Both the position numbers and the translations under genes were made by a program. The notes beneath the pieces were generated by a model that searched no databases, had not been told where the DNA came from, and was given only the letters and a program-made list of their open reading frames with translations. Source: Geosiphon pyriformis uo1 (taxonomy: Eukaryota; Fungi; Glomeromycota). Taken from it: a DNA stretch of 64,000 bases. Position 1 is the stretch's first letter. The number at the start of each line of letters is the position of its first letter. This document shows positions 3,131 through 64,000 of this stretch, piece by piece. Location: NCBI GenBank assembly GCA_016748015.1, contig JAAOMT010000714.1, forward strand, positions 101,840 to 165,839, in the 5' to 3' direction.

Positions 3131-3386
3131 NNNNNNNNNNNNNNNNNNNNNNNNNNNNNNNNNNNNNNNNNNNNNNNNNNNNNNNNNNNNNNNNNNNNNN
3201 NNNNNNNNNNNNNNNNNNNNNNNNNNNNNNNNNNNNNNNNNNNNNNNNNNNNNNNNNNNNNNNNNNNNNNNNNNNNNNNNNNNNNNNNNNNNNNNNNNNN
3301 NNNNNNNNNNNNNNNNNNNNNNNNNNNNNNNNNNNNNNNNNNNNNNNNNNNNNNNNNNNNNNNNNNNNNNNNNNNNNNNNNNNNNN
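3131..3386. other. Assembly gap (256 N)
   Basis: Run of N between LINE copies 1 and 2. Confidence 1.
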
Positions 3387-41606: not shown

Positions 41607-44600
41607 GTAGTCTGGTATAGAAAATTGCCATGTGTAATGTTTGTGGGTTGAACAATCCTGTAAAGCAAGATAATGTCATTCGTTGGCACAAGGATATAAA
41701 TAATTTGGTTTCTATTTTTATGGAGTCAAAACTTAAAGGGAAAGTTTGTCCATGGTTGACTGACAAATTTGATGGTGTTTGGGTTTTTACTTTTGGTCTG
41801 GATTTTGGTTCTTTGGGTGCTGGTGTGTTGATCATTGTGAATTTTTCTTTAGCAAAACATGTCTGCAAGGTCTCTGAGGTGCCTGGTCAGCTCTTATCCA
41901 TCAAGTTGCTTTTCAAAAATAAACTTTCAGTGTCTATTTTGGGGCTCTATGCTGATGTTTCATCGGTGGTTCAGTTTTTTCAAGCTGGTGAAATCAACTC
42001 TCTTATTGCTAAAGCCATTAATAATTCTTTTTTTGTTATCTTTGGTGGTGATTTTAATGAAGATGGTTCTAGAAAGTGTGCGAGTTTCAAAAAGTGTCTT
42101 GATTTGGAGTTGGTTAACTCTTTGATTGGAAGCCTGGCCATTAAAATGCCCACTTGAGCAAATTCTAGAGGTGTCATGAAAACTATTGATTAGGTGTTTG
42201 TTTCACTGAATCTGGTCAATTTTTTGGTACATCGCGGTATTTCGAACATTGGTGAATATTTTGATACAGACCACCAGGCTGTGTCTGTATCTGTGGGCTT
42301 GGGCAGTTTATTAGATACATGCTTGTTTTTTCTTTGCAAGCAGGCAAATAAAAATTGTTGGAAATTTGATGTTAAAAATGCCAGTGAGACTAAATGGCTT
42401 AAGTTTAAGGATGCTATGGCTGCTAACACTACTATGTTTTTGGGTGCATTTGGTGATGCTGTGAAGTTTTCTGATCTTGGCGCTATGTAGAACATCATTT
42501 GCAAGATTATAGTTCTCTCAGCTGGTGGTGTTTTCAAAAAAAAATGGTTCAAGAGTTTTGATATGGTTCGCAATAAAGTGTTGTCTAGGTTTTATAAGCT
42601 AGAGCTGTTGGTTTCCAAGCTGGTGAAGGCTTCTTGTTTGAGTTCTAGTGTCAGTTTTGCTTTGCTTTTGGGTACATAGGACAATCTTGACTCTGCTGGT
42701 GCTTTGACAGTAAGATCTATGTTCTTTTCTGGTGCTAAATTTGATGACATTTGTTCTGCTCTGGCCAAAGCAAGAAAGTTATACCACTTTTCTAAATTGC
42801 TGGAATTCAAGTGCACTGAAGAATCTCACATTAGGCAGGCTATTACCAATAGGATGGAGAGTTTTGAACTGGATAAGAATCATACAATCAGAAGTGTATT
42901 GAAACATCTCTTTTGCAAAGTGGTTTTGGACCATCTGGTTGTGGGCAATGAGTTAGTTCTTAAATCTGATTTGGTTAAGTTCAAGGTAGATGCTATCATA
43001 GAAGAATAAACCAGGAAGCGTGTGGTGGTTGATAATATCTCTGATACTTGGTTTCGTCAATACCAACTTTTGGACTACGTTTTTGATGATGCTTTTTCTG
43101 GAGTGATGAGTGAGATTAATTTTGATGAGTTGCATCATGTGATTACCAGTTTTCCAAATGGAAAAACTGCTGGTCTCTTAGACATCTCTAATAAGCTTTA
43201 GAAATATTGTGATAAGTCAGTTTTGGGTTTGCTTTTAGTTCTTTTGAATTCTTGTTTGTCTTGTGAGTTGGTGCCTGGTCCTTAGAAGGAAGCTTGAGTT
43301 TTAATGATTCTCAAACCTTATGAGTGGGAGGGTATTCTCACAAATACTCATCCTATTGCCTTGATCAAAACAGCTCACAAGATTCTATCCAAGATTCTTT
43401 CAGATAGAATCTCACTGGCTTGCAGCTCATATGATGTTCTGCGTGGTAACAATTTTTCAGTTTTAAAGGATACAACAACTCAGTCTCCTATTTTTGCGAT
43501 TGGCTTGGTAATTAAGGATGCTTTGGAAAAAAACTGGGAACTTTGGCTTGTTCTACAGAACATGTGGAAGACATATGATTTGGTTGGCTGAGAGCACCTT
43601 AAAAAGAGCTTGGTCAGGATCAAAATGTGTAGTAAATTTGTTTGCTTTTTTGGTAGTATTCATAGAGACTGAACCAACCATGTTATAACAGATTTTGGTT
43701 TGACTGATGGTTATTAAGTGTTTGATGAGTTGGACCAAAGTAAAGTTTTTTCCTCTCTGCTGTGGCACATATTTTATGATCCTCTGTTGTGTGAAATCAA
43801 GCATCAAGAAAGTATGTGTGGTTATAGGCTCAATTTTTATTTTGTTTCTGGGAGTGATCACACTGAGTCTTAGGCTGGGCTTTCTACTTTTCTTGCTGCT
43901 GGTGTCTTTGTTGATGATACTATTTGGATTGGTAGCAGTCAGGCTGCTACTCAGCATATTTTTAACGTTGCTAGTGAATTTTTTTGAGTCAATGATATTT
44001 CAATTAATAATGACAAAACTGTGGTCATTCTAGTCAACAGCAAAGTCAGTGTTCCATCTCTTTTTATTAGTGGTTCACCTATTTCTGTTGCCCATAGAGG
44101 AGAACCTCATCAGTATCTTGGTATTTTTTTGTCAACTGAGGGCCTTTCAAGGCCTAGCTTGGCTAAAGCACATTTAGACATTTGTTTTTTTACTAATTTA
44201 GTTCTAAGGAAGGCAGTTTCAGATAAGCAGTTCTCTATCCCATAATCGGCTACAGAACACAGTTCAGCAATATTCCTGTTAGTGTGTGCAATAAATGAGA
44301 TGCTCTGATTTGCAAGGGCTTAAAGCTAAAAGCTGGTCTCCCAATGGACTTTCCTAGTGATACTATTCACCATCCCTCTTTTTATGGTTTAAAATCATTT
44401 TCACAGTGTTAATCTGAGAGTAAAGTAGCTTCGCTTATTAGTTTTGCAAACTTTGGCAGGATCTTGAGGCATTTGTTCAGTCACAGATCATATGACTTAC
44501 AGACTCTGTGTTGGCAGCCCATTCACTCATTGATCTCTCCTGCTCATATTCATGTTAGTGTTTCTAATAATTTCTTGGCTAGTATAGTTCACATTCTCTT

Positions 44601-46260
44601 TGATTGCAATTTGTCTTTGGGTGGCTCTTTGGCCAGTACTTTTCAGTTTTATGATGGAGTTCCTATGTCTGTCATTCTTGGTGAGTCTTTGTTTTTCAAG
44701 TTTCTATCTTCTCTCTAGTGTTTTGGCATTGCCTTTGTAGATCAGCTTTGTGATCATTATGACATTGTTTTTAGCTGGTGTACTTTCAAGTGGTGGAAGA
44801 GGCTGGACCTTTATGGCCCAGTTCTTGAATAGTTCGGACTTTCTGTTGTATTTTTTACGGCTTCTCATTTGCCTTCCACAGTCTCAGTTGGTGTTAGTCC
44901 TTTTAAATTTTGTGAGTTTAATGATTTTGTGGCCGCCTATGGTCATCTTTCTCAGGTTGATGTCAATAGTTTGTCTATATATACAGATGATTCTTTGAAG
45001 AATTTGGGTACAGTTAATTGTAGAGCTGGGGCTGCTGTTTTTTTTGAGAACATTGATTTGGGTTTGGGTGTTGGTGTTCAGGGTTTAGCATCATCTACTT
45101 TAGCAGAGTTACAGACTATAACATTGGCTTTGGAATGTGTGTCTGCAGCTCGTTCTGTTAATTTGTTTTCAAATAGTTAAGCAGCTTTAGATGCTTGTAG
45201 GTCTGAGTTAAGCCTGGTGTGTCCTGACTTTCACAATTGATGTTGGGTCAAACATCAGCATATTTGGAATGTTATCTACAATAGGAATTTGAGAGTTAGT
45301 TGACACAAAGTCAAGGGCCACTCCGGCGTCTCGGAGAATGACTGCACTGATAGCATTGCTAATGCTGTATCTCTATCTGGTTGGTATCTTCCTCCTTGTA
45401 TGGATGGACACTTTTTGTTGGTGGATAGTAGTGTTGTTTCTAGTAATTCTAGACACTTTGTTCGAGATGTTTATCATGTGGTTTGTCATGTATGCTAAGA
45501 GATCGGTTCCAATTCTGGATTTCTAGCTAGTAGTTTGCATTCAGATGTTGACTGGCTCAGCTTTTCTAGGGTTTGGCACCCTGATTTACATATGGCCACT
45601 GGTTTTACTAGCAGGCTCACAGCTGATACTTGTACTTATCTTATGAAGGCTTTGCACCATCAGCTTCCTGTGGCTGTCTGGAAGTGCATTTACAATAAAT
45701 GTTACCCTAATGTCCTGTGTCTGTATTGTAGTGAGGTAGAGGTTTCTGATCATGTGTTTTCTTGTGCAGTTGATAATTCGGTTCATTGTCAGGTACTGGA
45801 ATCCTGTATGTCTTATTGGAAGTCACTTTCTGGGCTCTTTCTTCCCTCTTTGGTTGTGTTGCAGTTGATGTTGACCTGTGCTTCAGATTTGCTGGTCTCC
45901 TTGGCTCTTTATAAGGGTTTTGTTTTCAATGGATGGCTACAAGAGGCTGTTACTGTCTTCCATGATCCCAAAATTGCTGGTGTTAAAATTACTGATTTTA
46001 TGTGCTTTCTATACTTTGCTTTTAGGAATGATATTTGGTTAGTCTATATCAAGTATCGTGCTTTTATGGAAAAGAATGACCTGATTCCAGTGGATGGATC
46101 TATTCTCATCCCAGTTTTTGGTTTGGTTTCGAGGTTGTCGCCTAGTGTGGTTAAATTGCTTGGTATTATTGAAGCCTTTGGTGTTCTTTTTGGCTTTTAC
46201 AAGTCTTGTTTATTTTTTTTGGGTGTTGGTAACATGGTTTCTGTTAATATAGTTGTATAG
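41603..46260 (+). pseudogene. LINE ORF2 (APE-RT-RNase H-CCHC), many stops and a deletion at ~44237
   Basis: GGDFN, DTDH, FVDDTIW (~43908), YLG, YTDDS, ELQTI, KVKGHSG, CLYCSEVEVSDHVFSC. Confidence 0.93.
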
Positions 46261-49200
46261 TGTTGTCTTAACTGGCTCGAGTGGCTGGTCACATGTGGTT
46301 AAGTGCATGATTCATGCCTAGTTTAGATTATTTCATTGATGTATAGTTCTAGGTAGTGTTTGGATCTCACTCGTTAAACAAAATAAAAAATAAAAATAAA
46401 AACAGTATTAAAAAACAAAAAAGCAAAATTAATTTAATTTTTATTTAATAGATTAATTAAATAAAACATTTAAAAATATGGTTTGTTTTGCTTTTAAAAC
46501 TGGTAAAAATTTATTAAAAAATACTACTTTAAACAATATAATTAATAATTAAGCTTGATTTATTTTGAGAAATGTATTATTATTATGGTTTTTATATTAA
46601 AAAAAAATTAGTTATTATTACAAAGATCTTATTCAAAATTTTATTTTAAAAATTTGATATAATAATAATAAATAAAAGTAATTAATATTGCTTTTATAAT
46701 TTTTTGGCTTTTTTAATTATTTATAAAATAATAATAATAATAATAATAATAAAAACAAAAAACCAGTTTGTTAATTAATCTATTATTAAAAACTTTTAAG
46801 TTTTAAAAAAAAATAAAAACATTATTAAGATTTTAACTAAAAAAATTACTAATTAAAAAAAATATATGTTTTAAAAGTTATTAAAAAACAATTTATATTA
46901 TTAATATTTAAGAAAACCATTTTTAAAATATTTTGTTTAAGTATTTTTATAACAAAAAAAACTACTTATATTAAAACTTTATTAATTATTATAAGAGGAG
47001 TAATATTTCCAATTTTTTTATTCTTTGTTTTAATTATAATAATAAAAATAAAAAAAAAAAAAAATTTTAATTATATAATATTAAATAATTATTATTAATA
47101 ATTAAAACTTAAAATAAAATAATAATAAAATATTTTAATTTATTATTACAATCTTAAAAATTTCTATTTATTTTAATAAAATATAATTTTATTAAATTTT
47201 ATATTGCTTTATTTTAAAAACTAAAATATATGTATTTTTTTTAAATTAGACATATTTAATAGTTTTATTTTATTAAAGTAATTTATAAAAACGGTTTTAT
47301 TTTTATAATTTTATGTATTTATTTTTTTATGGTTTTTTTATAAAAATTTATTTAATGTTTCTGTAAACTTTATCTATAATACAAATTTTTATAACTAATT
47401 ACAATTAATTTAAACTTTTTAAAACCACAAAAATAAATAAAATTAGCAAAACATTGTTCTTATTTTTAGATTAAAGTAAATTTTAAGCAAATTAATAATT
47501 AAATTGACAATAAATTTGATTTAACTTTTAAAAAAAAACAAAATAAGTTTTAATAGTTATAAAAAAACAATTAAATTCAATTTTTTTAATTATAAATTTT
47601 ACTAAACTAAACAAATTCTGTAATTTAAATTTAAAAATTTAACTTAAATTTATATATCTTATTAAAAAACTATTAATAAAGTAAAACTAAGTATTATTAA
47701 AAAGCAACAGCTTTAATATAAAATACTAAATTATTAAACTAATTAACAAAAACTTCAAAATTTGTTTTAAAAAATTAGAAAAAACAGATTTATAATTAAA
47801 AGCTAAATAATTTAAACTTTAACATTTATAATAATGTTAACATCTAAAAATTTTTCATCAAATATAATTTTTGTGTAAAGCATTAATCTTAAAAATTACT
47901 TTAACAAAAGTTTTTTAAACTTAAAAACAACAATAATAACAAATTATTAATAATAATTAATATTAAAGAACTAAAAATAAGACTAATTTAATTACTAATT
48001 TAAAAAACCATATTACTGATTTTAAAAACTATATAGCCAAAAAAAGTTAATTAATTTGGTTTTAAATGTATTTTAAAAAACCACTTTTTTAATTAACAAA
48101 AAAAAATTTTAATATTAAAATTAACAAGTAAACAAAATAGCTTTGATAATTTAAAAAATTTAAAATACATAATAATTTATTGTTATAAACCAGTAAACTT
48201 TAACTTAATACTCGAAATTTTATTAAAAAAAATGTTTATAAAACATTATGTAAAGCTATAACAAAGAAAACAAAAACAAAAACAGAAATTACAGAAAATT
48301 TTGCAATTTAAGAGTAATAAAAAAGTTTAACAAGTTTAATTTTAATAAAAATATTTAAGAAAACTCGAAAAACAAACTTTATTAAAAAAAGTTTAATATT
48401 GTTTTTAATTACTAATTTTAAATTATAAAACTATGGTAAAATAAAAAAATAGTTTTAATATAAGCTAATTTAATTTTTGCAGTTTTATTATATATTAAAA
48501 TAAAAATTATCTATTTAAAAATTTTTAATAATTTTTAAATATTATTAAAATTAACAGTGTTTTTTTTTTAAAAAAAAGAAAATATTTTAATTTTTAACTT
48601 TTTAATTCAAATTTTAAGATTAAATGTTTTAATAAGTTATTTAGTTAAAAATACATATATATTATAATTTGTTTTGTTTTTAAAACTAATAAAAATTGAT
48701 TAAAATTCAATATATTAAATAATTTAGTTATATATTAATTAGAATTAGCTTTAGCAATATATTGTTGCTATTATTAAAATAGAAAAAGCCATTGTTTATA
48801 ATCAAATTAAAATTAAATATTATAATTAATACAATTAATACAATTAATAAAAACATTAAAAACCGAATAAAATTTTTGTTTTTTTGTTTTTTTGGCTATT
48901 TAAGCAATAATAAAAAGAATTATTGAGAGATATAATAATTTAATTAACAGTTTGTTATTAAAAATCTTATGAGTTTTTATAATAATAGCAATTATATTAA
49001 AACTGATCTTAGTTGGTTGTTTAAAAAACTTTGAATAAAAAACTTTTATTTAAATTATAATATATTAAAACAATAAAACAGATAATAAAATTGAAATTTA
49101 TGAAATTAATCAAAATTAACAAGTTTTAAAAGGTTTAAAATCAAAATAATAATATTTTATTTATATAATTGTATAAAAATCTAAAATTATACAATATATA

Positions 49201-50212
49201 TATGATTAAAGTTAAATAATATGATTGTAAAAAAATCGAATATGTATAATGTAAAATAATATTTTGAATATTCAGTAACAATAAAAAAAGTTTCATTTGC
49301 AAATCTTAATAAATTTGCAATTACTTAATATATAAAATCAAAAAATACAAGAAACCAATTAAAAAAAGACTACTAAAATTAGGATTTTGAATGGTAAAAT
49401 AAATTATCAGATATATATCTAAATATGCAAAAAGTATATTTAATTAAAACAGTTTTATTTGAATAACAACAAACATTTAATTAATATTAAATATAATAAA
49501 ACAATACTTAAATTATTATTAAACAGAAATGGCATTAACAAATTTTTTATTTAATAGTAATATTTTATATTTAAACAACAATAACAGTAACAAAGTTCAA
49601 TACAATATTTTGAGCTGTAGTGTATTACAATTTCAAATCTTGTTAGTTAATCAAAATCTAAAATATATTACAATTAATTAAATAAAAAATTGTGCACAAT
49701 GACCAAATATTTTTCAATTAAAAAATAATATCAGTTAAATTTGTAACATAAACATTGCCAAATTAATACAATTTAAATTCAAAACAAATTCAGAAATGTT
49801 AAAGGTGATACCAAAAATTTTGTAAAAAGATGTGCTTATTAAGAAATCAGATATTTAATTATTATTATTATAATGTCGTAATTCTTAAACAAATTGAAAA
49901 GATTATTTTAATACAAAAATAACAAATTTTGAACTGTTAAACCATCTAAAACTTTTAATGAAATACATAACATTATGTAATTATGCATATGTTTATTTTT
50001 AATAGAACACTTGTAGGTCGAAAGAATTTTAATGTGATGGAATAGTATATTTAAACATCAAAAAATACATTTATTGATAAAGGTTGTTTAATCTGGTTAA
50101 ATAAAAGATTTCAAAAACATTACTTACAAAACTAAAAACAATTCAAGTCAATATATATTGCAAAATAGACAAAAAAAACACAGGATTTTGATTAATATTA
50201 CTTTTATTGAAA

Positions 50213-50213
<1 letters not shown>

Positions 50214-50252
<39 letters not shown>
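50214..50252. repeat. (ATT)13 microsatellite
   Basis: Uninterrupted ATT run. Confidence 0.9.
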
Positions 50253-50609
50253 TGAAGGCAAAAAAATATTAGAAATAGATCTCGCTTTTTTGACTCAATA
50301 TTTTTTTAATCCTGTTACTCCATTTAAGACAGAAAGTTTGAGTTTCTTTTTCATTTATAACATTCTTTTTATGTTCTACAAATATGTTTTCGATATCTTG
50401 TTTGTGTGTTGGTTAAGTCACAATTAATTTTTAATTTTATTATTTCTTAATAATAAAAGTATGCCAGTTTTTTTCTAACAATTTATTGAAAAAATCATTA
50501 AATTTACAATTTGTAAAATTAAAAAACAACAAAATGAAATTAAATAGTAAAAGCTTTAATTCAAAAACAAAAAATGCTCAATAATATTGTTTCATACATA
50601 AGTTTTGTT

Positions 50610-50900
50610 TGGTGTTCCAAATGGGTCGGCTAGGATAATTTTTTTTCAAATTTCCAATCCTACCCGACCTGCAACCCGATTAATTTATTCGGGTCAGATA
50701 TTACTAACTTTTTTTTTGACTTTTAAGTAAAAAATACTTACGAAGCTTGGTCTTTCTCTAGGTCAGGTCGGATCGGGTTGAAATCGGGTCGGGACAAATT
50801 CCGAACTCGCATCTGACCCGAAGATTAACGGGTCACATTTTTCGGGTCGGGTCGGGGTTCAAATTTGGGTTTGACCCGACCCGGCCCGATCGGAGTACCA
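50610..50900. mobile_element. hAT-type MITE (291 bp)
   Basis: Perfect 8-bp TSD GTTTTGTT (50602-50609, 50901-50908). Imperfect TIRs TGGTGTTCCAAATGGGTCGG and revcomp TGGTACTCCGATCGGGCCGG. Many internal TCGGGT/ACCCGA motifs. Confidence 0.85.
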
Positions 50901-53586
50901 GTTTTGTTATTTGTAAACATATACTATTAATTTGTTTATTTTACAATAACTCTGTTAAGTAACATGTAAAATGATTTATTAGAAAGCTGAAAACCCATAG
51001 ATTTATTAATAATTAATTTAGTGGATGATACATTTTTTTGATAAAAAATTAGATATAATGTAAAAGAGGGCAGTTTTGACGAATGGAGTATTGTGGGAAG
51101 TTAATGGTTGTGATAAAAGAAAATGCATACTTTCACGTATCTTATGCTCGCACGTGAATTTATTTTTGCTAACTTTGCCACAATACCGTAATTCTTCAAA
51201 AATATACCCTCTTTTTACCTTATGTAAACTTTAGGTGATATATTTTCATAGAAAGTGTATCGTGCAAAAATGTCTTTATACACATAGTTGAATCTTAAAT
51301 TCCAAATTCTTTCAAAGGTTGTTAAAATAACAAATAATAAAAAATCTAAAATTTAAAATTGAATTTTTTTTTTCTAATTTTTTCGCTTTAACCTTAAAAT
51401 TATATTTTCTCTTGAATGAATTGTTACTGTATGTTTTAAATCACAATACATATTCCCATATATAAATTTACAAAAAGCTTGAAATGCCAAAAACAAATCA
51501 CGATGAAGGTAAAAGCTATTAGAACATAATCTACCAATACTGAAAATTTTCAAACAAATTTTGCGATTCTAGATGGCTTTGTTAATTATTTTTTCATTAT
51601 TACTTGCTTTCTCAATTTGCTTTGAATCTTAAACCTTCTTGCTAAAAATCAAAGGTGCTTTTGAATATTTTTCAAAAAGGGTTTTAAGGGCCTATAATTT
51701 TCTATTTTCTAGTGTTTCTTTCTTATCGTTTAAAGATTATATTATCAAAAAAGCCTAAAAATTTAGCAAAGCTTAAATTTAATTATTAGAGACTCAACGC
51801 TTTTTTATTGCAAATATTTGAAAGGATCATATGGTAGAGCAAAATTGATTATCAATCTATAAAGAAAATTTTCATAAAGATCTTATTCTGCTTTTGACGA
51901 AAAGGCAGAATTTTAGTGGTCAGAAACTTGAAACTTCCATTCGAGATTTTGCGCATTGAGGCTTAGAGAAACCAGAAATGCAAATTTGGTGTGATTTTTT
52001 CGAATTTTCGGGGTTTCCGGCTTTTCGTAATTGAATCCGTTTGGTGAGATAAAGTTCTGGAAAATCTTATACCAAATACCACGTCTATTCAAGTCTTTGC
52101 GTCACTCCAAAATGCATCTTCGCCCAAACTTCTTCAGCCGTGTTTAGGTAATCAATTTTTCTTCAAATAATGCCTTTTACTTCATTCTGCAAATACTTTC
52201 GGGTCTCAAATCTGATGTTTTTTTTTTGGATCAGATCCAAAGAAAGGGTATGCTTGCCCCTTTATTTGATATATTGAGTCTGCCTGAATCAAAGGCTTGG
52301 CGTCCTCGCCCTAAAACGCGCTTTTTTTCCTTTTAAAGAAATATCATAGCATAGCCATCGCGTTTTGAACCGGAAAGAAAAAGGAGATCTCAAAGAATTT
52401 ATGCGAGCCCTTGAAAACATCTCAATTTCTTTATTCATTGAAGCGTGCTCAAAGACAAATTTATGTTTTCTGTCGATCCTATTGATGTGTGATCTACGCC
52501 TTTCCCCCTTGAGAGGCTTCCCGTTGTTTTGCATAGTGTTGATTACCCGCATTTCATTTTCTTTCGCTTACCAACCTGAAAATTTATTAATTCCACTTTT
52601 TACTTTCATTCAGATCTAAAGGGAATGGAAGTAAATCATACGATCAATCTGAGAAGAAAACGTTGCATACTATGGTGAACTTTATTAGACTCATTCTTCG
52701 CAAATGTTTATGACAAGTGCTTTTACCGAAAAATATACCTTTAACAATAGCACACTGCAGGTCTAGAAATTTCTAAAGCCCGTTTTTTATCACTTCCTCG
52801 CATGCTAATACCCATAATAACTTTATCTTTCAGCAAAAACAATAGGGTTGAACTTCATCAAAAAGAGGATTTTCGTAAAATGACATCATGTCAGGCACTT
52901 TGGTTTTTAAAAACAAGCTAAGGGTATAGGAAACAATAGATTGTCCTGTTTTGAAAAGAATGGAACAGTTGACTAAAAGAGGAAAATACATGAATTTTTT
53001 TTAAAGTTTGTACTTTTCATATAACTTTAATTTTTATTTTTTCATTCTTGAAAAAAAATGGAATCAAATAAAACACAATTTTTTTTAAACTACGCACACC
53101 TCCGATTTACTAAAGACGAAATAAAGGAAGTGATTCTAAGGTAACATCATAAATGTAACTTAACCGATAGTTACTCAACTAAGTCCTAGCCAATATGGAA
53201 TTAGTTCTTTTGTTTATCTGATTTCTTATAGTCTAAAAGAGTTTTTGTGGTTTAGTTGTGCGTAGTGTTGTAGAAAAAATATTTGTCCGCATAAACATAA
53301 ATGTATCTGGGAAATTTAAAATAAAATTAAACACCCAAATAGTCCTGCCTTCTACTAATGTATGAAAATACGTAAGCACTATTAACGGTAAAAAAGAAAT
53401 GATCGTAGTGAATTTGTATATGAGAAGGAAACGCCGAAGTTAATAGGGCCATTGTTTGTGAAGGGATTGAAAATTATATAGAGGAAAGTCAACGAAATAA
53501 TCAGGGGATAAATCGAAAAAAAGATCAGGGGTCAAGGAGAAAAAAATCAAAAACTCATCAAGTTGACGAGCTTCCTTGTTAACTCT

Positions 53587-56500
53587 TTATCTCTCTTTGT
53601 TAAGAATGAGTCCTTTATGTCTAAGTAAATTCTGTCCTTCATCGATCGCTTTTTCTACTTCCATGATTAATCTCTCACCCCATTGAGGTATCTTTCCTCT
53701 TAACTCCAAACCGCTTCCTTTAGCACCATTAGAAGATGTCAAATTGTTCGCGTTCGGCCCATTCCATCGGGGATAATTGGTCGTAATAAAATCAAAAATT
53801 TCAAGTTTCAAGTCTTCTTCTAAGGCTATTTGGAAATTTGGTTCGATACCGTATAATGAATATACATATTGATCTATTGTATACTGAAGACATGCTGAAG
53901 CGTGAAGAAGGGACTCAAAGAATGGCTTCATAATGCGAGTTTTGTTCGCACCATATCTCCCTGTTGCTTGTGGTGTATTTAACATCTCGACATCATTATC
54001 GGTGGTGTGATGAGGCGAAGATGTCAGGGTTGAACCATCAATTATTTCATCAAAACGTGGTACAATTTCGGGGTATAAGGAATATTCGACGCCGTCCCCA
54101 CGTCCCCGACATTTTTTAACCATAACCCAATTGCCTTCCTGTTCTTCCCTTAAGACAACGCTTGTCTCATCACCATCACCATCTTTCTCTTTTTCTTGCC
54201 ATTCTCGACCCGTCAATTGCCACGCACCCCGTCTCAATTTTTCTACCACAGCGCTAGAAACTTTATCCTCGTCATCACATAGGCGAATTCCTTCAAAGAG
54301 CATCTTGCGTACATGAATCATACGCTTGACGCATCCAGAAAACCAATTTGCACCGTCCATGTCTTCAGGGGGCGCGTAAGGAATCTTTGCCATGCTTTCT
54401 CGAAAAAGTCGCATCCGACCTTGTTGGTCATATTTACAATGGTGCGATAAAAAGTGTTGGATAGTGGTGGAATTTAGTAAACCGAGGAAGAAATATGATG
54501 ATAAAGGGGTCGTGGACTTAAGGGTAAAATATATGCACTGGAAATTGAATCACATATATGGAGTAGTGAGAGATATATCAAATATTCAAGAGATATATAT
54601 ATGACAAATTAAAGGTTAATTGATTAAATTTTCTTTACCTGATTTGTTACGCAAACGTTATTTTCATCAATGAAAAACCGTTGACGCGGCTAATAAACCA
54701 GATTGAAAAAAATGAAATTTAGGAGACGTAAAGGAGTAACTATGTCCAAAATAAATTTATGGCTTGGTAAAGTTTTGACTTTCAAATTTTCTTCCAATTA
54801 TTTTTTCCTGGTAATGCCGAGTCTTTTTTCTTCCTCTTTTAGGCGGAAAAAACTATGAACCCAAAAGAATTTAACATATGACGAACCTGGTTCTTAGAAA
54901 AATAGCCATAATTAATGGGATGTATGATTTTTGTTTCGACATCTACCCTGGATATAGATATAAATATATATGATGTTATTTAAGCAAAAAAATTAAAAAA
55001 AATGCAACAATCTCAAGTTATAATAGCTTCTGAAATTCTATGACAAGATGGTATTTGGATGATAAATTAAGATCAAATTCCCAGCTGAATCATTTTTTCA
55101 TTTATCCTGGAATTTGTACGACCTTATCCATGAATAAGAATGGTAAAAGACAGTGCAAACTACAAGACAAGACAACTCACCCACACTTGCTAGTTCCACA
55201 ATAAACGATTTCTCTAGAGCTCATTCCAGTTTGCAGATTTTTTCGAGCTTCCCTTAGATAATACCAAAAAGCACTATCTTCCCCAACCTCTTTTCTTACT
55301 TTATCAACAGCGTCTCGGTCCACCATTATTAAAGAATATACAGACTTTTCAGAAGCGACTGGAGCACTAGTAACACCCAAAGGAACATAAGCTTCTGCAG
55401 GGGAACTTTCTTTCTTTTCTAATCGTAATTCATCACCCATTTTCTGCCAAAATTCTGCTTCTTTTCCACCATTTTTTCCGTTCCAATAGAACACAGGACG
55501 AAGCCACCTTTGAGAAACTTCTCGCCCAAATTTATTATAAGCCCAAGCCGTTCGAACCACTAAAGCATACACAGGATTTGTATTTGGTCCTCTATGCCAG
55601 ATCAACGGGTTACGTTCAAGCCATGAAGATTTTACACTTTGATGATCGCAAAGAGACGGTAAGTTTACAGTAATAGAATGAAGATAGGCGCTCACAGCAG
55701 AGGTAGGCATTAAAAAAGTGAATGAGTAAGAATTAGTTGCTGATGGCAGAATTGTACTCGGATAAGGTGGTGTGAGCTTGTAATGCATGTCTTTCTCATA
55801 ATTGTTAAGCATTTTTTGGTCGAAATTGGAATATGCTTGAAGCGTTTCTTGTAAAGTCGCTTTACGATTCATATAACGTAGAAAAAGGATAGACGGTTCG
55901 TTATTGTTAAAAGATGTTGATTGTGTGGATGCTATTAGATGATTGTGGAGTGGAATGATTTCTCTTCGACGACGTAGACGAAATATCAGTGAATCTGTTT
56001 GAATTTTTCGCCATACTTTGAATGGTTCGAATTGAAAAAATTCAACAAAGTGACACCTTTGCCAAAGCCACGCTCTATTACATGATTATAGAATTAGGAT
56101 CAACATCTATGAAAAAAAATCGTTCACATCGAAAAACCAAACCTGAGCTTATCTGCAAACTCTAAGCCCATCCATTGACTTGCTTTTGTACCAAATGAAA
56201 TTGGGACAATTTAGAATTTTAAATATTGAAATTCCGGTTGAAATAAAGGAAATGTAGACACGAAAAATTATGCGAAAATTCTTACCGCTAATCAAGCAAA
56301 TTTCCCCAAAATCTTCATGACATCTTTCAACGCAGAACCAAAAGAAATAAGCGTATGCCTGCATTCCACCTTTTCCTAATACTCTCTCATCAAAAAGTTC
56401 ACTATCCGGTTCAGAGATAAATCCGGTCTTTCTTATCATGTAGGGTGGATTAGTGACGATATAATCAAACTTGAGGCGTTCAGGAGAACGTAGTTTCGAT

Positions 56501-58333
56501 AAATTTTCATACTCCCAAGCAAGTTCAGGCTTTGGCAGATATAAATTTAGTGTGTCATTACGAAACAAATACATCCTTGTTAATTTTAGAGTGATTTCTT
56601 GATTATTGGGGGAAACTTGAAGAAATTGCTTATAAAGTGGTAATAAATGAAGAATGATGTTGAGCTTGCAAAGATGAAGGGCAAATGAATCAATCTCTAT
56701 TCCCCATAGGTTTTTGGCTAGTGATTGAAGTAAATGTCCAAGAGCTTTATGTTCCTCCCATACGGAGGGATATTGTCGCGCAGCAAGTGTGAGACGATTG
56801 ATAAATTCGCAAAGAAAGGACCCAATCCCCATACATGGGTCTAAAACTCTTGGTGTATGAGGCATAAACCCAATCCTATGTCGATTTTGGTTCGTTGAAT
56901 TGTAAATATGAGCTTGATCTCTTAGCAGCTTTTCCAGCCAAGTAGAATTATCTGTATAGTCCTTTGGCAGCAAAACACGATCCCACATAAAACGCATAAC
57001 TTCACGTGGAGTATAAAATTGTCCATGATCCTTTTGATGTTCTTTAGCGAAAATGTTTAAAAAATATTTTGTGTAAAACATTGACAAGATTGATTCTATG
57101 GAATCTGGAGTTGTAAACCGTATGGAAAATATGTGCAACCGCGGAAGTAAATTACATGGATAGTTGAATTCGACACGTATTACGCGACGATAATACCACA
57201 TGAAAGCGTCCAAAAAATATTCGTGATCTGTACCATTATTTAAGGAGTTTGGTCGATTGATCAAAAAGTTATCTTCATCCGAAAATATTTTCATAAATTC
57301 TCTTAAGATCATTTGTTGAGTTTTTTTGTCTTTTTCATGATCACATAAAAAGTCCATTACTACCACTTCAAAGAACATATGAGCCACACTTAAGAAAGCC
57401 GTCTTTTGACAATAAAAATCAAAGACATATTGATAGAAATGAGCACTGGGTGAAGGTACGCTTGAATGAACATCTGATGAAAGTTCAGCTCGAAGCTGGT
57501 CCAAACTTCTAATAGGTGGTGGTCTTGACGTAGTCGGACTTGGGAGAGGAGTCTCCTGCAACAGTTTATTAAATTCGACCAGAAATGTTGATGGAATTTG
57601 ATAGTCTACAATATAATTATGAATTGATTAATAAAATATTCTGTGTCAGACAATGCATCAAATATTACGTACTGATTGGCTAGATACGTATTTTGCAAAG
57701 TTTTGGTGTACATTACAAACAAATTTTTAGTGTTCCATCGTTAATCTTTTTTCTTTTTTTTTGCTTCGATTTTTACTTCCTTAATAAAATAAACTAAAAG
57801 TGCTACTTACCATATTCATTGGAAGTTATAACTGTTCGCCGAACGTGAATTTTAATTTCTTCTAAAGTTTCTCCCAGAACCTCGACAACTTTAATAACTT
57901 GTTCTTCGGACAAATGGCAAGTAAAAGTTGGTGTAGGGAAAGCTGAGGAGGATGAAGGCGAAGAGGATGATGATAAAGAGGAAGAGGATGGAATAATAGA
58001 AGTTGAGGAGAAAGGAGCGGTATGCCTTCCAGGAGAGCGTAAAGATTCACCATGAGCGCAAATTTGACCTGGGTTGACGGGTTTAAAAACGAATGGTGTT
58101 GTAATTTGAATATCGGAGACAGGTTTGTGCCTTGAAACGTTTATATCTTGATATGAATAAATTTCGCTTTCAGTACAAGGGTCCACCTCATGGTCGTTTA
58201 AAACAACGTTTAGCCAGCTAGAAGTGGAACTGCTCCCAGCTATGTTTGTACGGTTGCGTTTTGACAAACGAGTCCTATTCTTGGGAGAGACGGGAAGATA
58301 TGAGCCCTCCTTGACGCTAGGAACATGCGCCAT
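53587..58333 (-). CDS. Intron-containing, restriction-modification-type DNA amino-(N6-adenine) methyltransferase with a TaqI-like target-recognition domain, ~1279 aa
   Basis: Hand-built 7-exon model, all introns GT-AG and phase-consistent: 58333-57811, 57605-56286, 56182-56143, 56074-55181, 54947-54887, 54689-54639, 54537-53587 (3840 nt). Motifs: HGQFYTP (~57015), VLDPCMGIGSFL (~56830), WGIEID, FDYIVTNPPY (NPPY 56440-56451), spliced ISASQWMGLEFADKLRAWL, and TRD-like KIIHP...RFFIDE...YFFLGLLNS...KIPY. Confidence 0.9.
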
Positions 58334-61300
58334 TTATGTTTCTATTAATAAATTGAGTTTACGAATGGTCCTTTATAAAGAAAGAGGTAAAGGACAAAGC
58401 TTCGAAAAAGCGGGGTTATTAGATGAAAAGGAAGATATAGCACCGCAAGCCCTGCATAGTGACACCTTCAAAGAAGGTTCTTGCTTATTTCGTAAAGTCT
58501 ACGTTGAAAACAGAGGGTCAAAAGAGACGCTCGCTTTCTCTTGCAAGTCTCACAGAGCTGACTATGGAGGAAGCGAATGGTAGAAGGTTCAAAAATAGTA
58601 AAGCGTTGGCAAAACAATCAAGGTCAATCATTATTTTCTTTTATGTTACCGAAAAATCAAAATTTTTCGGTTTATATTATCACGTAATAAATATAGTGCA
58701 TATATAATATAGATATATAATCAAAAATGGTCAGATCTGGCGATCCCGGGCATTTTAGCTGCAGGTGAGTTTTAGTCCCAAGGATTATACAAGAATTTTG
58801 TTTTATTTGGATAGTAGGGAAAGACACGAGGCATTTTTTACTTTTAATAAAAACTCAATTTTATTTTGGATTTCAAATTTTCTTATTTAAGAGGACCATT
58901 TATTTCAACAATTTTTTCTTCAAACAACTAGAAAAACTTTCAAAAATTACCATAAATTTTTTGACTCATTTCGATCCACATTTGGGACAACAAAAAAGGT
59001 GATAATATTACATTACTAAACTTGGCGTTATTATGTAGCATTTAAAGCTCTTTTTTTCACACGAACTTTTACAAATTTCAAAAACGCATGACAAAGAAAA
59101 GACTTATGGGCGTTTTGAGTCTTAAGACAATATAAAAACAATATCAGGCTGAAGGAACAATGGTCATTAAAAAGTGAAAAGGCAATTATTAGGGGGTAAA
59201 AAGTGTTCGGTTAACTCTTGAAAAAAAAACCCTCCTCCCCCAAAAAAAACCAAATAATACTGGAAAAAATCCATTATCCCTGATCGTCTCTCAATTCCAT
59301 AATTGGTATCTAAATATTTGCAAGCAAAAATAGTTTATGATATTTAAAAATGTTCCATTGTTAATCTTTTCCGGAAAAACTGTCTCAATAAAATGAACAA
59401 AAGTTGTTAGCTGTTGTCACACCTTCTCATGACTTTTTTAAGTCCAAGAAACGTGCTAATACAGATTGAAATCGATACCAATCCTGAATTAGTTACAGTA
59501 CAAACCATTTAAAGAATTTTCATTTGTTAAAAGACAATGTTTAAAAACCAGATATTAAACAGACAATCTCTGTTTGGTTAATACACTGAAAATCTGAATC
59601 ATACCAATTTTTCTCTAATGCAAACTTTATGTTTAGATTTTAAGAAAATTTTTTGGCCTTTGGCTTCATTTAAATTTAAGATTTCAAAATAGGTTTAATT
59701 ATATTATGCCATAATTTTTGTTTAATAAAATTATCATTATTTTAATTGCATTTATAGTAAATTCAAATTTTTATATAATTGTTATTACTTATATGCATAT
59801 TATAATATAAAGTATTATTAAAATTTGTTAAATATTGTAAAAATTGTGATTAATTGTAATTAAAAATCAAATTAAAACTGTTTAAAGCAATTTTTTATTG
59901 AAAATTACAATTTTTTTTCTTTGAATTACAATTTTATAAGATAAAAATATATTATTATTATGGAATTGTAATTTTTAATTGATTTTTTATTTATTAATTA
60001 CTTTTTTTAATTAATTATTATTGTATTTTTTATTTATATAATAATAATAATATATAAACATTATTTTTATATTAAATTATATTTATTTACATATAATTTT
60101 ATTAAATTAAATTATAATCTATTTTACTTATTTTATAATAAAATTTAATTTTATATTTTTTATAATATAATAAATAAGTTTACTTAAAATTTTTTTAATG
60201 TTTTAAAAAATATATTTCAATTATTATTTACAAATTAAAATATATATATATTTAAAAAATTAATATAATTATGTATTTTTTATATATAATTAATTATTTA
60301 AACCAATTAAAATTAAATTATATTAAAACTATATATAGAATTATATAATTTTTATTAAAATTACTTTAATGTTTTTTAAAACAATTGTTATTATTAAAAT
60401 TAAAATAATTTTAATATTAGTATATTATTATTGCAATATTTTTAATTTATAAGTATTTATAAGAGAATATTATAAGTTAATATTTAATTTAAAACTCAAA
60501 TATTTAAACAATTGCTTTTTAACTTAACAATAAAAGTTTTACAAATATATTAACTTATATTTTAAAAATTTATAATTAGTTTAAAAGTTCAATTTAATTT
60601 TTATTGAATTTTATGTTTTAAAAATTTTTTTTTATTAAGATATTGATTAATTTCTTAAAAATAAAAATAAAATTTAGTAAACTATTTATCATTTTCTAAT
60701 TTCAACTCAAACTAATTAAATTTTATTTAAACTACTTAAAATTTATCTAAAATCTCTAAGCTTTAACTTAAACTGCTTAAAATTTGTTAAACTGCTTGAA
60801 ATTACTATTATTACAAATTTCAAGATTCTATATAATTTAATTATAACATTTGTTATATTTGTATTAATTAATATAAAATTAAAAAGATGTATTAATAATA
60901 ATTAAATAATCATTATATTTTGTAAAATAATAATAAGTATTAAGTTAAAAATAATTTCATAATAATTTTTAATCTAAATTTTAGCTGGTAACAACATTAA
61001 TATTGTTTATCTAAAACTTTTTGGTTTTTTGTTATATTTTAAAAAAATTTATAACAAAACTATTGTTTTTTGATAAACCAGAAAAAGATATGATTAAAAA
61101 TAACAAAAAAGTTTGCTATTGTTACTGATAAAAATGGTGCTTTTTTTTTTGTTACTTAAAACAAAGTTTTCGCTACTGCTAGAGTTTTTTTGAGCATTTT
61201 TACAAAAAAGCCAACAAAGTAAAATAGTATTTCAATAATAATAATCAAAAATTATTTTACTTAAGAAAAATGCTTTTATAATATTTTGTCTAACTGTTTT

Positions 61301-61945
61301 TACTATTGGAAAAATATTTTTAGTTGTTGCTTTTTTACTTATAATAGCAGAAATAATAGTTATAAAAAGTCTTCAAATTATTAAATTGGTGCGAAAGACT
61401 GACAAATTGGTCAGAGATGCGTGCTGAAAATGAAAAGGCCGGTCTGATACGATATGATGAGGTAAACTTCGTGGATGACCCTAATTCAAAAGGATTGATG
61501 ATGGGGACGCGAATCATTCAGGGAACTTAACGTTTGTGACCTGGGTGTGTTTGATGACGCATTTAGTTTGTTCCTAATGTAGTTTTGATTGGCTAGGCAT
61601 TTAGTCACGTGAAAAAGCGCGCAGTTCGCGTATATATATGGCTATGTAGATAACTATTCGCAAAAAAAATTTTACAAGTAAATGGATTTAATTTTAAAAA
61701 TATTAAGAAAGAATTTATTATATATAAGCTTATAAATTTTTAATATAAAATGATTTTTTAATTTTTTATATTAAATAAATTTTGTCCATTGCAAAAATGA
61801 GATCAGACTATGAAAGGAACGGATGGACCCACACAGACGATTTGCCTGTTAAACGCTAATCTACTTATTTGGGTTTTTTAATCATTGCGGTAAAATAGGA
61901 ATATATTCAAACGCGCCATCTTTGGAAAAGTTGAGTGGCTCAGTT

Positions 61946-62015
61946 TAGTATTGTCTTGACGTAAGTCCGGTGGCTGGTCACGTGTTGAAACCGCATGATC
62001 CACATAGATTAGACA
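61946..62015 (+). repeat. Isolated, diverged copy of the 5' half of the LINE 3' tail
   Basis: TAGTATTGTCTTGAC..GGTGGCTGGTCACGTGTTGAAACCGCATGATCCAC aligns with the copy 6 tail TAGTGTTGTCTTAAC..AGTGGCTGGTCACATGTGGTTAAGTGCATGATTCAT. No ORF2 sequence recognisable upstream. Confidence 0.55.
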
Positions 62016-63430
62016 GTGGAAGGTTATAGCAAAATTAAAGATTTTTTTGTTATTTAATTTAAACAAATTTGTTATTTAAAAATAGAGTTGTATTTTTAAA
62101 AATAATTTTCATATAAAAATTTTTAATTAAATTAAATTATTTGTATTTGTATTTTTACTTCTTAATCATGTAAATTTTATGTTTACAATTAGAGTAAAAT
62201 AACTAAAAACCTTTTTTAAATAATAAAACAGTTAAGCAAAATATTGTAAAATTTTTTTTAATTGATATAAATTTAAAAACAATCTTTAATTGTTTTAAAA
62301 GCATATTAAAATAATAATAATTACATTAAAAACTGTTTTTAATATGCTGTTTTAAAATAATAAAAATTTTTAGCAATTAAAAACTGTTTAATTTCTATAA
62401 TACTTAGAAACAGTGTTTTTATAAAACACTATTTGGTTGTTTTTATTGCTAAATATAAAAATAAGTTTTATTATTATTATTAAAATAATAAATTTTTTGT
62501 GTTTAAAACATAATTATTTAATTTTAATTATTAAATAAATTCTACAATTTAAAACTTATAAAAAACTTATTATGTTGTTGTTATTTAGCATATTTATTTT
62601 AAAACAAATTAATAATTTAACAAAATAAAAAATTTAAATTATTATAATAAAAATTTTGTTATTATTATTAAAAATACATTAAGCTATTTTATATAAAATT
62701 TACATATTAAAAATTTTTAAATACTATTATTAAAATTAAATTAAAATTTATTAATTTTTAACAATATATTATTTTTTATATAAAATTTTTTAATTATGAT
62801 TAATTTTAAAAAATATATTATTAAATTTTTTTATTTTAAATTAAAAAGTTGTTTTAAAAAACCTTTTTAAAACCAAATTAAATAATTTTTTGTTTAATTT
62901 ACAATATTTAAAATAAATAATATAATTGATTAAATTTAAAAAAATTTATTTTTTATTTTTTAATTATTTAATTTTAATTATTATTAAAAATATATTATTG
63001 TTATTTTTAAATTTAAAAAATTTTTAATTACAAATATTGTTTTAAGTATTAAAAATTTTAATTTTTTGGTCTAATTAAAATTATTATTTAATATGTAATT
63101 TTAATTATTATTTAATATAATATATCAAACCAAATAACTTAAATTAAACATAATTCATATATATTCTATATATAATTAAATATAAATTCAACTTAAATTA
63201 AATTATGTTAATTTTATAAAGAAAAATTTATTCTAAAAAGATATTTTATTCATAAATATAATTAAAATATTATTATAATTATATTACTTGTTTATTTAAT
63301 AATTTTATTTGTATTTAACTTGATATTAAATAGTTAATGTTTTTAAAAAAGTATTAATTAATCAAATATATATATATTTAAAATATTATTATTTTTAAGT
63401 TTATACTTAGTTTTAAGTTTAATAATAATA

Positions 63431-63971
63431 TTTTTTTTATTAATATAATTAATAAGTAAAGTCTAATTACTATTTAGTATACAGAATCAAACCAAGTAAC
63501 TCAAACTAAATATAACTCATATATTTACTATATGTGACTAGCCACTTAGGCCAAATAAAACAACACTATACATTTATGAAAACTTTTATATTTTTATTCA
63601 AACCAAAAAAAAAGAACATAACTTATAACTGCCAAAATTGATTGTAAAAAATTTAATAATACCAAGAAATCTGACTATATTATTTGACAATTTGGTCATT
63701 AAATTATCAGTCAGATCAAACATTATATTATCATCTTTTATTAAACCAGTTTTTTTTATTTTAGTTCTAAATTTAGATCTATTAAGCCAAACTATAGAAC
63801 AATATTTTTTTACTAGTCAATTTACAAAACTGATAACTGTTGTTAAAAATTTTTTTTTGGTTTCAAAAATTGACAATGTTTTAGTACACCAAGCTTTTAA
63901 CACAAAACTTTTGCAAATTATAGCATACAGACCTACATTTAACAAACATCTAAATAGAGTATTTATTACAG
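63431..63971 (-). mobile_element. LINE copy 7, 3' end only, decayed
   Basis: Reverse complement gives the ORF2 C-terminus (ICKSFVLKAW..), stop at 63566-63568, tail (TTGGCCTAAGTGGCTAGTCACATATAG) and A-run (T-run at 63431). Confidence 0.88.
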
Positions 63972-64000
63972 AAAAAAAAAAAAAAAAAAAAAAAAAAAAA

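What the first reader, a model, noticed from the sequence alone, without database searches (positions are those of the whole stretch)
53587..58333. Bacterial Type II/IIG-like DNA methyltransferase domesticated as a 7-exon eukaryotic gene
Seen: an intact ~1279-aa spliced frame in a region where everything else is decayed. Motif order is X (GQFYTP), I (DPCMGIG), II (GIEID), IV (NPPY), then SQW..FADKLR, then a C-terminal region with KIIHP / RFFIDE / YFFLGLLNS / KIPY. Three small exons (40, 61, 51 nt) missed by the ORF track supply conserved motifs, supporting the model. The N-terminal ~230 aa are Ser/Pro-rich with a basic patch (KNRTRLSKRNR, possible NLS). No PD-(D/E)XK nuclease motif and no neighbouring REase or HsdS gene is visible. 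Established: this order plus TRD defines gamma-class amino-MTases (M.TaqI, Eco57I-like, PglX); known fungal 6mA writers are MT-A70 family. Inference: an ancient horizontally acquired, sequence-specific 6mA (or 4mC) writer repurposed for host chromatin, repeat control or symbiont interaction.
Basis: partly seen in the sequence, partly recalled or inferred. Interest (0 to 1): 0.88.

Follow-up and report, generated by a model that had tools for sequence, protein, structure and literature searches.

The report
Geosiphon copy of fungal MetB methylase
This is a real, intact, spliced and expressed gene for a bacterial-type adenine DNA methyltransferase. It is the Geosiphon pyriformis copy of MetB, a family already described and knocked out in Mucor in 2024, so it is ordinary rather than new.

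Summary
A minus-strand gene of 7 exons (58333..53587, all introns GT..AG, 3840 nt, 1279 aa) carries gamma-class N6-adenine DNA methyltransferase motifs in the order X, I, II, IV, followed by a TaqI-like target-recognition domain. The 40, 61 and 51 nt exons are real. Five of the six junctions appear in assembled contigs of a public run.

Every exon matches the public protein KAG9285956.1 (Geosiphon pyriformis, 1279 aa) exactly.

The novelty claim fails. The family is MetB (Lax et al. 2024, Nat Commun 15:6066). Deleting it in Mucor lusitanicus removes asymmetric 6mA and the AAA(6mA)CA motif. The authors had already proposed an ancient bacterial transfer followed by vertical descent. Their supplementary list of fungal metB homologues contains KAG9285956.1 itself.

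My tree places the gene inside the fungus-only clade, next to Ambispora. It is the only N6_Mtase locus in this genome.

Two small additions:
- The closest solved fold is the orphan methylase CamA (Z 25.4), with no nuclease domain.
- The exon structure is identical in three orders of Glomeromycotina. Introns 2 to 4 are shared with Mucoromycotina and Mortierellomycotina.

Verdict: already known, low interest.

The parts
57811..58333 (-). Exon 1 (523 nt, residues 1-174 plus 1 nt). It encodes a Ser/Pro-rich, poorly conserved N-terminal tail with a basic patch at residues 18-28.
   Evidence: The donor is GTAAGT. The junction 57811>57605 is seen in a contig of run X1.
56286..57605 (-). Exon 2 (1320 nt, residues 175-615). 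It encodes the helical N-domain and the methyltransferase core: motif X 57007-57024, motif I 56815-56841, motif II 56689-56703 and motif IV NPPY 56440-56451.
   Evidence: Pfam N6_Mtase and Eco57I. These motifs are invariant in a 32-sequence family alignment.
56143..56182 (-). Exon 3, a 40-nt micro-exon encoding the conserved SQW..FADKL segment.
   Evidence: Both flanking junctions are seen in run X1. A 40-nt exon sits at the same place in Rhizophagus, Diversispora, Calcarisporiella and Modicella.
55181..56074 (-). Exon 4 (894 nt, residues 628-926). It encodes the end of the Eco57I-type domain and the first half of the target-recognition region, including the invariant RGPNTNPVY block at 55549-55593.
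   Evidence: The downstream junction (intron 4) is not covered by run X1. It is supported by colinear homology and a shared intron position.
54887..54947 (-). Exon 5, a 61-nt exon encoding the KIIHP segment.
   Evidence: The junction 54887>54689 is seen in run X1. Homologues align to it.
54639..54689 (-). Exon 6, a 51-nt exon encoding the PRQRFFIDE segment, where the Pfam TaqI_C match begins.
   Evidence: Both junctions are seen in run X1.
53587..54537 (-). Exon 7 (951 nt including the stop). It encodes the rest of the TaqI_C-type recognition domain (to 54379), a low-confidence acidic insert and a C-terminal helical bundle.
   Evidence: A 1614-nt contig of run X1 covers it and runs on past 53500.

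Best explanation
The gene is the single-copy Geosiphon pyriformis orthologue of MetB, the fungus-specific (clade 1) gamma-class N6-adenine DNA methyltransferase of early-diverging fungi. Shown here: it is intact, spliced as modelled and present in assembled transcripts. It keeps every SAM-binding and catalytic motif (X, I, II and IV = NPPY) and a TaqI/CamA-type target-recognition domain in the same chain. It has no nuclease domain and no restriction partner nearby. It sits inside the fungal clade in a position that follows the species tree. Inferred from the Mucor knock-out and from the solved CamA and M.TaqI complexes: the enzyme acts alone, reads a short asymmetric A-rich sequence with its recognition domain, flips the target adenine into the NPPY pocket and transfers a methyl group from SAM. 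This writes non-ApT, one-strand 6mA in nuclear DNA. The Ser/Pro-rich N-terminal tail with its basic patch probably serves nuclear import or regulation.
For: Gene model and exact identity to KAG9285956.1, exon by exon. Five of six junctions are seen in run X1. Pfam finds Eco57I, N6_Mtase and TaqI_C. The motifs are invariant across 32 family members. In the AF2 model (pLDDT 75.5) CamA aligns over 526 of its 547 residues at Z 25.4 and rmsd 3.6. MmeI, BpuSI and DrdV align only downstream of their nuclease domains. Tree: fungal clade support 100, Glomeromycotina 100, Geosiphon with Ambispora 99, with the Mucor protein in the same clade. This is the only PF02384 locus in the 128-Mb assembly. The gene is 36% identical to Mucor EPB88848.1 over about 1000 columns, E 1e-172. 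Lax et al. 2024 report that metB deletion removes asymmetric 6mA and the AAA(6mA)CA motif, that clade 1 is fungal and vertically inherited, and that Mucor lusitanicus has one copy. Their list holds KAG9285956.1, EPB88848.1, KXN73575.1 and KAI9143530.1. Introns 2-4 are shared across the three Mucoromycota subphyla.
Against: No enzymatic or methylome data exist for Geosiphon. In Rhizophagus irregularis the reported 6mA is low and described as symmetric ApT, with no asymmetric motif mentioned (PMC8298701), so MetB activity in Glomeromycotina is unproven. Run X1 is not on record as RNA and is labelled 'probably DNA' by the tool. Intron 4 is not covered. Glomeromycotina proteins carry N- and C-terminal extensions absent from Mucor, so the recognition sequence may differ.
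Confidence: 0.8

Rival explanations
1. The protein is a MetB orthologue but no longer a DNA methyltransferase in Glomeromycotina. It would be a reader or scaffold, or it would act on RNA or protein. That would explain the low, ApT-only 6mA reported in Rhizophagus.
For: The Rhizophagus methylome paper reports only symmetric ApT 6mA at low level. The lineage has its own N- and C-terminal extensions.
Against: All catalytic and SAM-binding motifs, and long blocks of the recognition domain, are invariant across 32 sequences from four fungal lineages. That is the pattern of a working sequence-specific enzyme. The fold matches DNA methyltransferases in complex with DNA, not HemK-type enzymes.
Confidence: 0.08
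2. It is one half of a restriction- or BREX-like defence system in the fungus, with a nuclease or partner proteins encoded elsewhere.
For: Structural relatives include BrxX/PglX, MmeI, BpuSI, DrdV and LlaBIII. NCBIfam gives weak hits to MADS and BREX methylases.
Against: The protein has no nuclease domain. No ORF of 120 aa or more lies within about 7 kb upstream or in the 5.7 kb that remain downstream. The NCBIfam hits fall far below their cut-offs. The best full-length match is CamA, a protein with methyltransferase and recognition domains only. The Mucor metB deletion strain is viable with regulatory phenotypes.
Confidence: 0.05
3. It is a recent transfer or contaminant from a bacterium, endosymbiont or the Nostoc partner. 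This would be the 'clade 2' situation that Lax et al. describe for some Glomeromycotina.
For: Clade 2 exists in some Glomeromycotina according to the paper. Geosiphon houses cyanobacteria (my own knowledge).
Against: The gene has six spliceosomal introns, five confirmed in contigs. The best prokaryote hits reach only E about 1e-8. The tree places it within the fungal clade at support 100. The intron positions are shared with other fungi. It sits on a 166-kb fungal contig among retroelements.
Confidence: 0.01

Closest known systems
MetB of Mucor lusitanicus (Lax et al. 2024, Nat Commun 15:6066; PMC11258239), fungal clade 1 of PF02384
   Same: Same family and clade. It is single copy. The core architecture is the same: helical N-domain, gamma-class methyltransferase and TaqI/MmeI-type recognition domain, with no nuclease. 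The two are 36% identical over about 1000 columns. Introns 1 and 3 are shared. KAG9285956.1 is listed by the authors as a homologue.
   Different: The Geosiphon protein is about 300 aa longer. It has a Ser/Pro-rich N-terminal tail, an acidic low-confidence insert and a longer C-terminus. It has six introns against two. No functional data exist for any Glomeromycotina member.
CamA, orphan adenine methyltransferase of Clostridioides difficile (PDB 7LT5, 7LNI)
   Same: It is the best solved structural match: Z 25.4, rmsd 3.6 A, with 526 of its 547 residues aligned across both the methyltransferase and recognition domains. It is solitary, with no nuclease. From my own knowledge, it methylates an asymmetric A-tract site (CAAAAA), which recalls the Mucor AAA(6mA)CA motif.
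   Different: Only about 18% identical. The fungal protein spans 828 residues over the same fold, so it has large insertions, and it adds a roughly 190-residue helical N-domain of the kind seen in HsdM and MmeI. It is not a close sequence relative (profile E 1.9e-8).
Type IIL/IIG restriction-modification enzymes (MmeI 5HR4, BpuSI 3S1S, DrdV 7LO5) and BREX PglX/BrxX
   Same: They share the helical domain, gamma-class methyltransferase and recognition domain in one polypeptide. The Pfam families Eco57I and MmeI_Mtase are shared. Lax et al. used MmeI as the HHpred template.
   Different: Alignments start only after residue 177-202 of these enzymes, so their N-terminal nuclease domains have no counterpart here. 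There are no BREX or restriction neighbours, and the setting is eukaryotic with introns.
MT-A70 family writers (AMT1 / MTA1c)
   Same: Both write 6mA in the DNA of early-diverging fungi.
   Different: The fold class and motif are unrelated (DPPW, PF05063). They methylate symmetric ApT and work as a multi-subunit complex. No PF05063 match is found in this protein.

Membership tests
MetB (fungal clade 1 N6_Mtase, Lax et al. 2024) | PF02384/PF07669 gamma-class adenine methyltransferase domain with motif order X-I-II-IV (NPPY) | tested here: met
   Pfam Eco57I 7.4e-18 and N6_Mtase 6.5e-14. Motif positions are, and the motifs are invariant in the family alignment.
MetB (fungal clade 1 N6_Mtase, Lax et al. 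2024) | C-terminal target-recognition domain in the same chain | tested here: met
   TaqI_C 8.2e-6 at residues 947-1016, exactly at the Pfam cut-off of 26.5 bits. CamA and M.BseCI align through their recognition domains.
MetB (fungal clade 1 N6_Mtase, Lax et al. 2024) | Placement in the fungus-only clade with the Mucor protein, apart from prokaryotes | tested here: met
   Quick ML tree: the fungal clade has SH-aLRT 100, Glomeromycotina 100, and Geosiphon with Ambispora 99. The best prokaryote hits reach E about 1e-8. The accession is in the authors' homologue list.
MetB (fungal clade 1 N6_Mtase, Lax et al. 2024) | Single-copy orthology | tested here: met
   One locus in the own genome, found with both the protein and PF02384. 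Mucor lusitanicus has a count of 1 in the paper's table.
MetB (fungal clade 1 N6_Mtase, Lax et al. 2024) | Writes asymmetric 6mA at an AAA(6mA)CA-type motif | not testable with these tools
   No methylome or enzyme assay is available for Geosiphon. This is shown only for Mucor.
Type IIG/IIL restriction-modification enzymes (Eco57I, MmeI, BpuSI) | N-terminal PD-(D/E)XK nuclease domain fused to the methyltransferase | tested here: not met
   No nuclease family in Pfam. Structural alignments to MmeI, BpuSI and DrdV begin after their nuclease domains. The N-terminus is a low-complexity Ser/Pro tail.
BREX PglX / Type I HsdM | Operon partners (BrxA-L/PglZ, or HsdS/HsdR) next to the gene | tested here: not met
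   No ORF of 120 aa or more flanks the gene. The ORFs tested elsewhere in the window have no such domains and include retroelement RT and RNase H. NCBIfam scores are far below their cut-offs.
HemK / N6AMT1 protein-glutamine methyltransferases | Small NPPY methyltransferase without a DNA recognition domain | tested here: not met
   HemK/PrmC hits reach only E 0.05-0.1 over about 17 residues at NPPY. The top folds are DNA methyltransferases with recognition domains.
MT-A70 (AMT1/MTA1) | PF05063 domain with DPPW motif | tested here: not met
   No PF05063 match at E up to 0.1. The catalytic motif is NPPY.

The most novel reading that the evidence does not exclude
In Glomeromycotina, reported 6mA is low and ApT-symmetric. 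There the conserved MetB orthologue carries lineage-specific additions: a Ser/Pro-rich N-terminal tail and an acidic C-terminal insert. It might have a recognition sequence, target set or role different from Mucor MetB, for example marking repeats or particular nuclei in these multinucleate symbionts.
Probability: 0.1. Interest if true: 0.5.

Novelty: already known. Interest (0 to 1): 0.12.

Why it matters
It matters little as a discovery. The family, its bacterial origin, its spread across early-diverging fungi and its role as the asymmetric 6mA writer were published in 2024, and this exact protein is in that paper's homologue list.

This check adds three things:
- Independent confirmation of the seven-exon model, including three micro-exons, with junction evidence.
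- CamA rather than MmeI as the closest solved structure, which gives a better template for predicting the recognition sequence.
- Shared intron positions across Glomeromycotina, Mucoromycotina and Mortierellomycotina. These show the gene was already an intron-bearing eukaryotic gene before those lineages split.

Whether MetB is active in arbuscular-mycorrhizal relatives remains open, but it is a narrow question.

Tried and rejected
- A single-sequence search of the PDB found nothing meaningful. The family profile was needed.
- The first tree attempt timed out in MAFFT. I rebuilt it with a faster alignment and the LG+G4 quick method. Prokaryote rows have long branches, so only the fungal part of the tree is trusted.
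- My first exon mapper failed on micro-exons and I rewrote it.
- Recent HGT or contamination was rejected, because of the introns, spliced contigs and tree position.
- A type IIG enzyme was rejected, because there is no nuclease domain.
- HemK/N6AMT1 was rejected, because a recognition domain is present and the best folds are DNA methyltransferases.
- A second, bacterial-like 'clade 2' copy in this genome was not found.
- The RNA run search returned one run of uncertain kind. It gave junctions but no expression level.
- Earlier-findings look-ups gave nothing bearing on this gene.
Full-length work used the public protein P0175 by id, after I checked it against each exon by reference. My scripts only walked that protein along the DNA.
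Full report
**What is in the sequence**

On the minus strand between 58333 and 53587 there is a seven-exon open reading frame. I located it by reading the three minus frames and the DNA itself.

| Exon | Coordinates | Length |
|---|---|---|
| 1 | 58333-57811 | 523 nt |
| 2 | 57605-56286 | 1320 nt |
| 3 | 56182-56143 | 40 nt |
| 4 | 56074-55181 | 894 nt |
| 5 | 54947-54887 | 61 nt |
| 6 | 54689-54639 | 51 nt |
| 7 | 54537-53587 | 951 nt |

All six introns are GT..AG and 68-233 nt long. The phases are 1, 1, 2, 2, 0, 0. The sum is 3840 nt, or 1279 codons plus a stop.

- GQFYTP 369-374
- DPCMGIGSF 430-438
- GIEID 476-480
- NPPY 560-563
- SQW..FADKLR 616-628
- KIIHP 932-936
- RFFIDE 950-955
- YFFLGLLNS 978-986
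- KIPY 1014-1017

The three micro-exons each carry one of the conserved segments.

**Whose gene it is**

The window is contig C421 (165,839 bases) of a 128-Mb, 792-contig assembly. A search with a Cetraspora homologue returned P0175, 'hypothetical protein G9A89_002376 [Geosiphon pyriformis]', accession KAG9285956.1. It is 1279 aa long and lies on a contig of 165,839 bases.

The whole-codon translation of every exon is found exactly in P0175 at residues 1, 176, 616, 629, 927, 947 and 964. The public annotation therefore already holds this exact model.

I sent no joined translation of the window to any search tool. All full-length analyses used P0175 by id after this exon-by-exon check.

**Splicing and expression**

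One public run holds the stretch. Its assembled contigs, laid on 53500-58400, skip exactly introns 1, 2, 3, 5 and 6:
- 57605 to 57811
- 56182 to 56286
- 56074 to 56143
- 54689 to 54887
- 54537 to 54639

Each skipped stretch ends CT..AC on the plus strand, which is GT..AG on the gene's strand.

Two caveats apply:
- Intron 4 is not covered. The contig ends at 54948 in adapter sequence.
- The run is not on record as RNA, and the tool guesses 'probably DNA'.

Spliced contigs at five canonical introns are best explained as cDNA, given that the genome has only one locus for this gene. Contigs cannot give expression level or strand.

**What the protein is**

Pfam on P0175 gives three matches:
- Eco57I, 7.4e-18, residues 472-649
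- N6_Mtase, 6.5e-14, residues 354-593
- TaqI_C, 8.2e-6, residues 947-1016, at the gathering score

NCBIfam gives only weak sub-threshold hits to MADS, Alw26I, BREX PglX and HsdM models. HemK hits are trivial and restricted to the NPPY segment.

I built an AlphaFold2 model of residues 176-1279 from a 32-sequence family alignment. Its mean pLDDT is 75.5 and its pTM is 0.71.
- Foldseek ranks the orphan adenine methyltransferase CamA first (E 1.8e-19, TM by target 0.71). M.BseCI, BpuSI, BrxX/PglX, MmeI, LlaBIII and DrdV follow.
- In the second-look alignment CamA gives Z 25.4, rmsd 3.6 A and 526 of 547 residues aligned, spanning model residues 192-1019. That covers both the methyltransferase and the recognition domain.
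- MmeI, BpuSI and DrdV align only from their residues 185, 189 and 177-202 onward, so their nuclease domains have no counterpart here.

The 'no nuclease' statement is supported.

No ORF of 120 aa or more flanks the gene. ORFs tested elsewhere in the window either have no Pfam hit or are LINE-like (RRM, RT, RNase H at 10.7-17.1 kb).

**The family and its literature**

An exhaustive HMMER scan with exon 2 found a compact family. It had 49 representative clusters at E up to 1e-10 and 35 at E up to 1e-30. The next tier scored about 1e-9.

The named family members all come from early-diverging fungi:
- Glomeromycotina: Cetraspora, Dentiscutata, Scutellospora, Rhizophagus, Acaulospora, Diversispora, Funneliformis, Ambispora, Paraglomus, Entrophospora
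- Mucoromycotina
- Mortierellomycotina
- Basidiobolus
- Conidiobolus
- Paraphysoderma

This is the MetB family of Lax et al. 2024 (Nat Commun 15:6066, PMC11258239). In Mucor lusitanicus, deleting metB cut 6mA by 70-75%, chiefly the asymmetric 6mA, and removed the AAA(6mA)CA motif. Symmetric ApT methylation by the MT-A70 complex remained. The authors describe a well-supported fungus-only clade 1. [quoted passage not shown] They name KXN73575.1 and KAI9143530 as members. Both are in my hit list as P0169 and P0033.

Their supplementary sheet 'fungal_NR_accessions' contains KAG9285956.1 itself. It also contains EPB88848.1, PHZ10716.1, OAD69548.1 and the Rhizophagus fragments. Their copy table gives Mucor lusitanicus one copy.

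A 2026 review and a 2025 Nature Genetics paper repeat the MetB story.

**Orthology tests run here**

- A quick maximum-likelihood tree (47 rows, 848 columns, LG+G4) gives the fungal clade SH-aLRT 100 and Glomeromycotina 100. Geosiphon pairs with Ambispora at 99, and by my own knowledge both belong to Archaeosporales. Mucor EPB88848.1 sits within the Mucorales part of the same clade. Prokaryote rows are on long branches, so I do not trust their order.
- PF02384 finds one locus only in the own genome, so there is no second, bacterial-like 'clade 2' copy.
- P0175 and the Mucor protein are 36% identical over about 1000 columns, E 1e-172. The match covers everything from the helical N-domain to the C-terminal helices.

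**Intron positions**

I mapped each public protein back on its own DNA.

| Feature | Where it is found |
|---|---|
| Seven-exon structure with 40, 61 and 51 nt exons and phases 1, 1, 2, 2, 0, 0 | Geosiphon, Rhizophagus, Diversispora |
| Introns 2, 3, 4 | also Calcarisporiella (Mucoromycotina) and Modicella (Mortierellomycotina), both of which keep the 40-nt exon |
| Intron 5 | also Calcarisporiella |
| Intron 3 | also Mucor and Rhizopus |
| Intron 1 | maps to the same column and phase in Mucor and Rhizopus, but in a poorly aligned region |
| Intron 6 | the three Glomeromycotina only, in this sample |
| Conidiobolus | one intron, at an unrelated position |

The gene was therefore already intron-bearing before the three Mucoromycota subphyla diverged. 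That fits ancient acquisition and vertical descent, and it excludes a recent transfer or contamination.

**How it most likely works**

Shown here:
- The gene is intact, spliced and present in transcript-like contigs.
- The catalytic and SAM-binding motifs are complete and invariant across the family.
- The recognition domain is conserved in long blocks.
- There is no nuclease domain.

Inferred from the Mucor knock-out and from solved CamA and M.TaqI complexes, which is established knowledge for gamma-class enzymes:
- The enzyme acts as a monomer.
- Its recognition domain reads a short asymmetric site.
- It flips the target adenine into the NPPY pocket and methylates N6 using SAM.
- The result is one-strand, non-ApT 6mA.

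The resemblance between CamA's A-tract site (my own knowledge) and the Mucor motif is a lead only, not a test. The N-terminal tail is Ser/Pro-rich with a basic patch, poorly conserved and outside the model. It may serve nuclear import or regulation, but that is a guess.

The main uncertainty is whether the enzyme is active in Glomeromycotina. The Rhizophagus methylome paper describes low, symmetric ApT 6mA and does not report an asymmetric motif.

**Verdict**

This is the already catalogued Geosiphon orthologue of a family that has been functionally characterised. Interest is low.

The small additions here are the junction evidence, CamA as the best structural template, the intron-position map and a frame error in one public Mucor model.

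Noticed in passing
L005:2826-3068 (Mucor circinelloides 1006PhL, gene for EPB88848.1): The public model EPB88848.1 reads about 51 residues in the wrong frame. The true intron here has a GC donor (GCAAGT) inside the Arg codon. The model instead uses a GT 4 nt downstream and then a 34-nt 'intron' that restores the frame. Newer Mucor models (P0192, P0228) read the conserved segment correctly.
   Followed up: yes
L003, L004, L009, L010 compared with window 53587-58333: A 40-nt micro-exon encoding the SQW..FA..L segment is conserved in length and phase in Glomeromycotina, Calcarisporiella and Modicella. Mucor and Rhizopus keep only its downstream intron. Conidiobolus has neither.
   Followed up: yes
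window 10685-17069 (+): A run of long plus-strand ORFs carries an RRM-type ORF1 (weak hit), a reverse transcriptase (1.4e-14) and an RNase H (7.2e-9). This is a LINE-like retroelement with higher GC (0.41-0.46) than the AT-rich surroundings.
   Followed up: partly
window 39801-46260 (+): This is a second block of moderate GC (0.37-0.41). Its ORFs of 127-322 aa have no Pfam match at E up to 0.01. It may be another degraded element or an unannotated gene.
   Followed up: partly
window 3000-9000, 17000-40000, 46000-52000 and 59000-64000: Very AT-rich stretches (GC 0.09-0.27) show a persistent positive GC skew over most of the first 33 kb. The methyltransferase gene (GC about 0.33-0.38) stands out as an island.
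   Followed up: no
run X1, contig ending at window 54948: The 1614-nt spliced contig ends in Illumina adapter sequence at the exon 5 acceptor. The assembly of that run therefore holds untrimmed adapters, and contig ends there are not biological ends.
   Followed up: no
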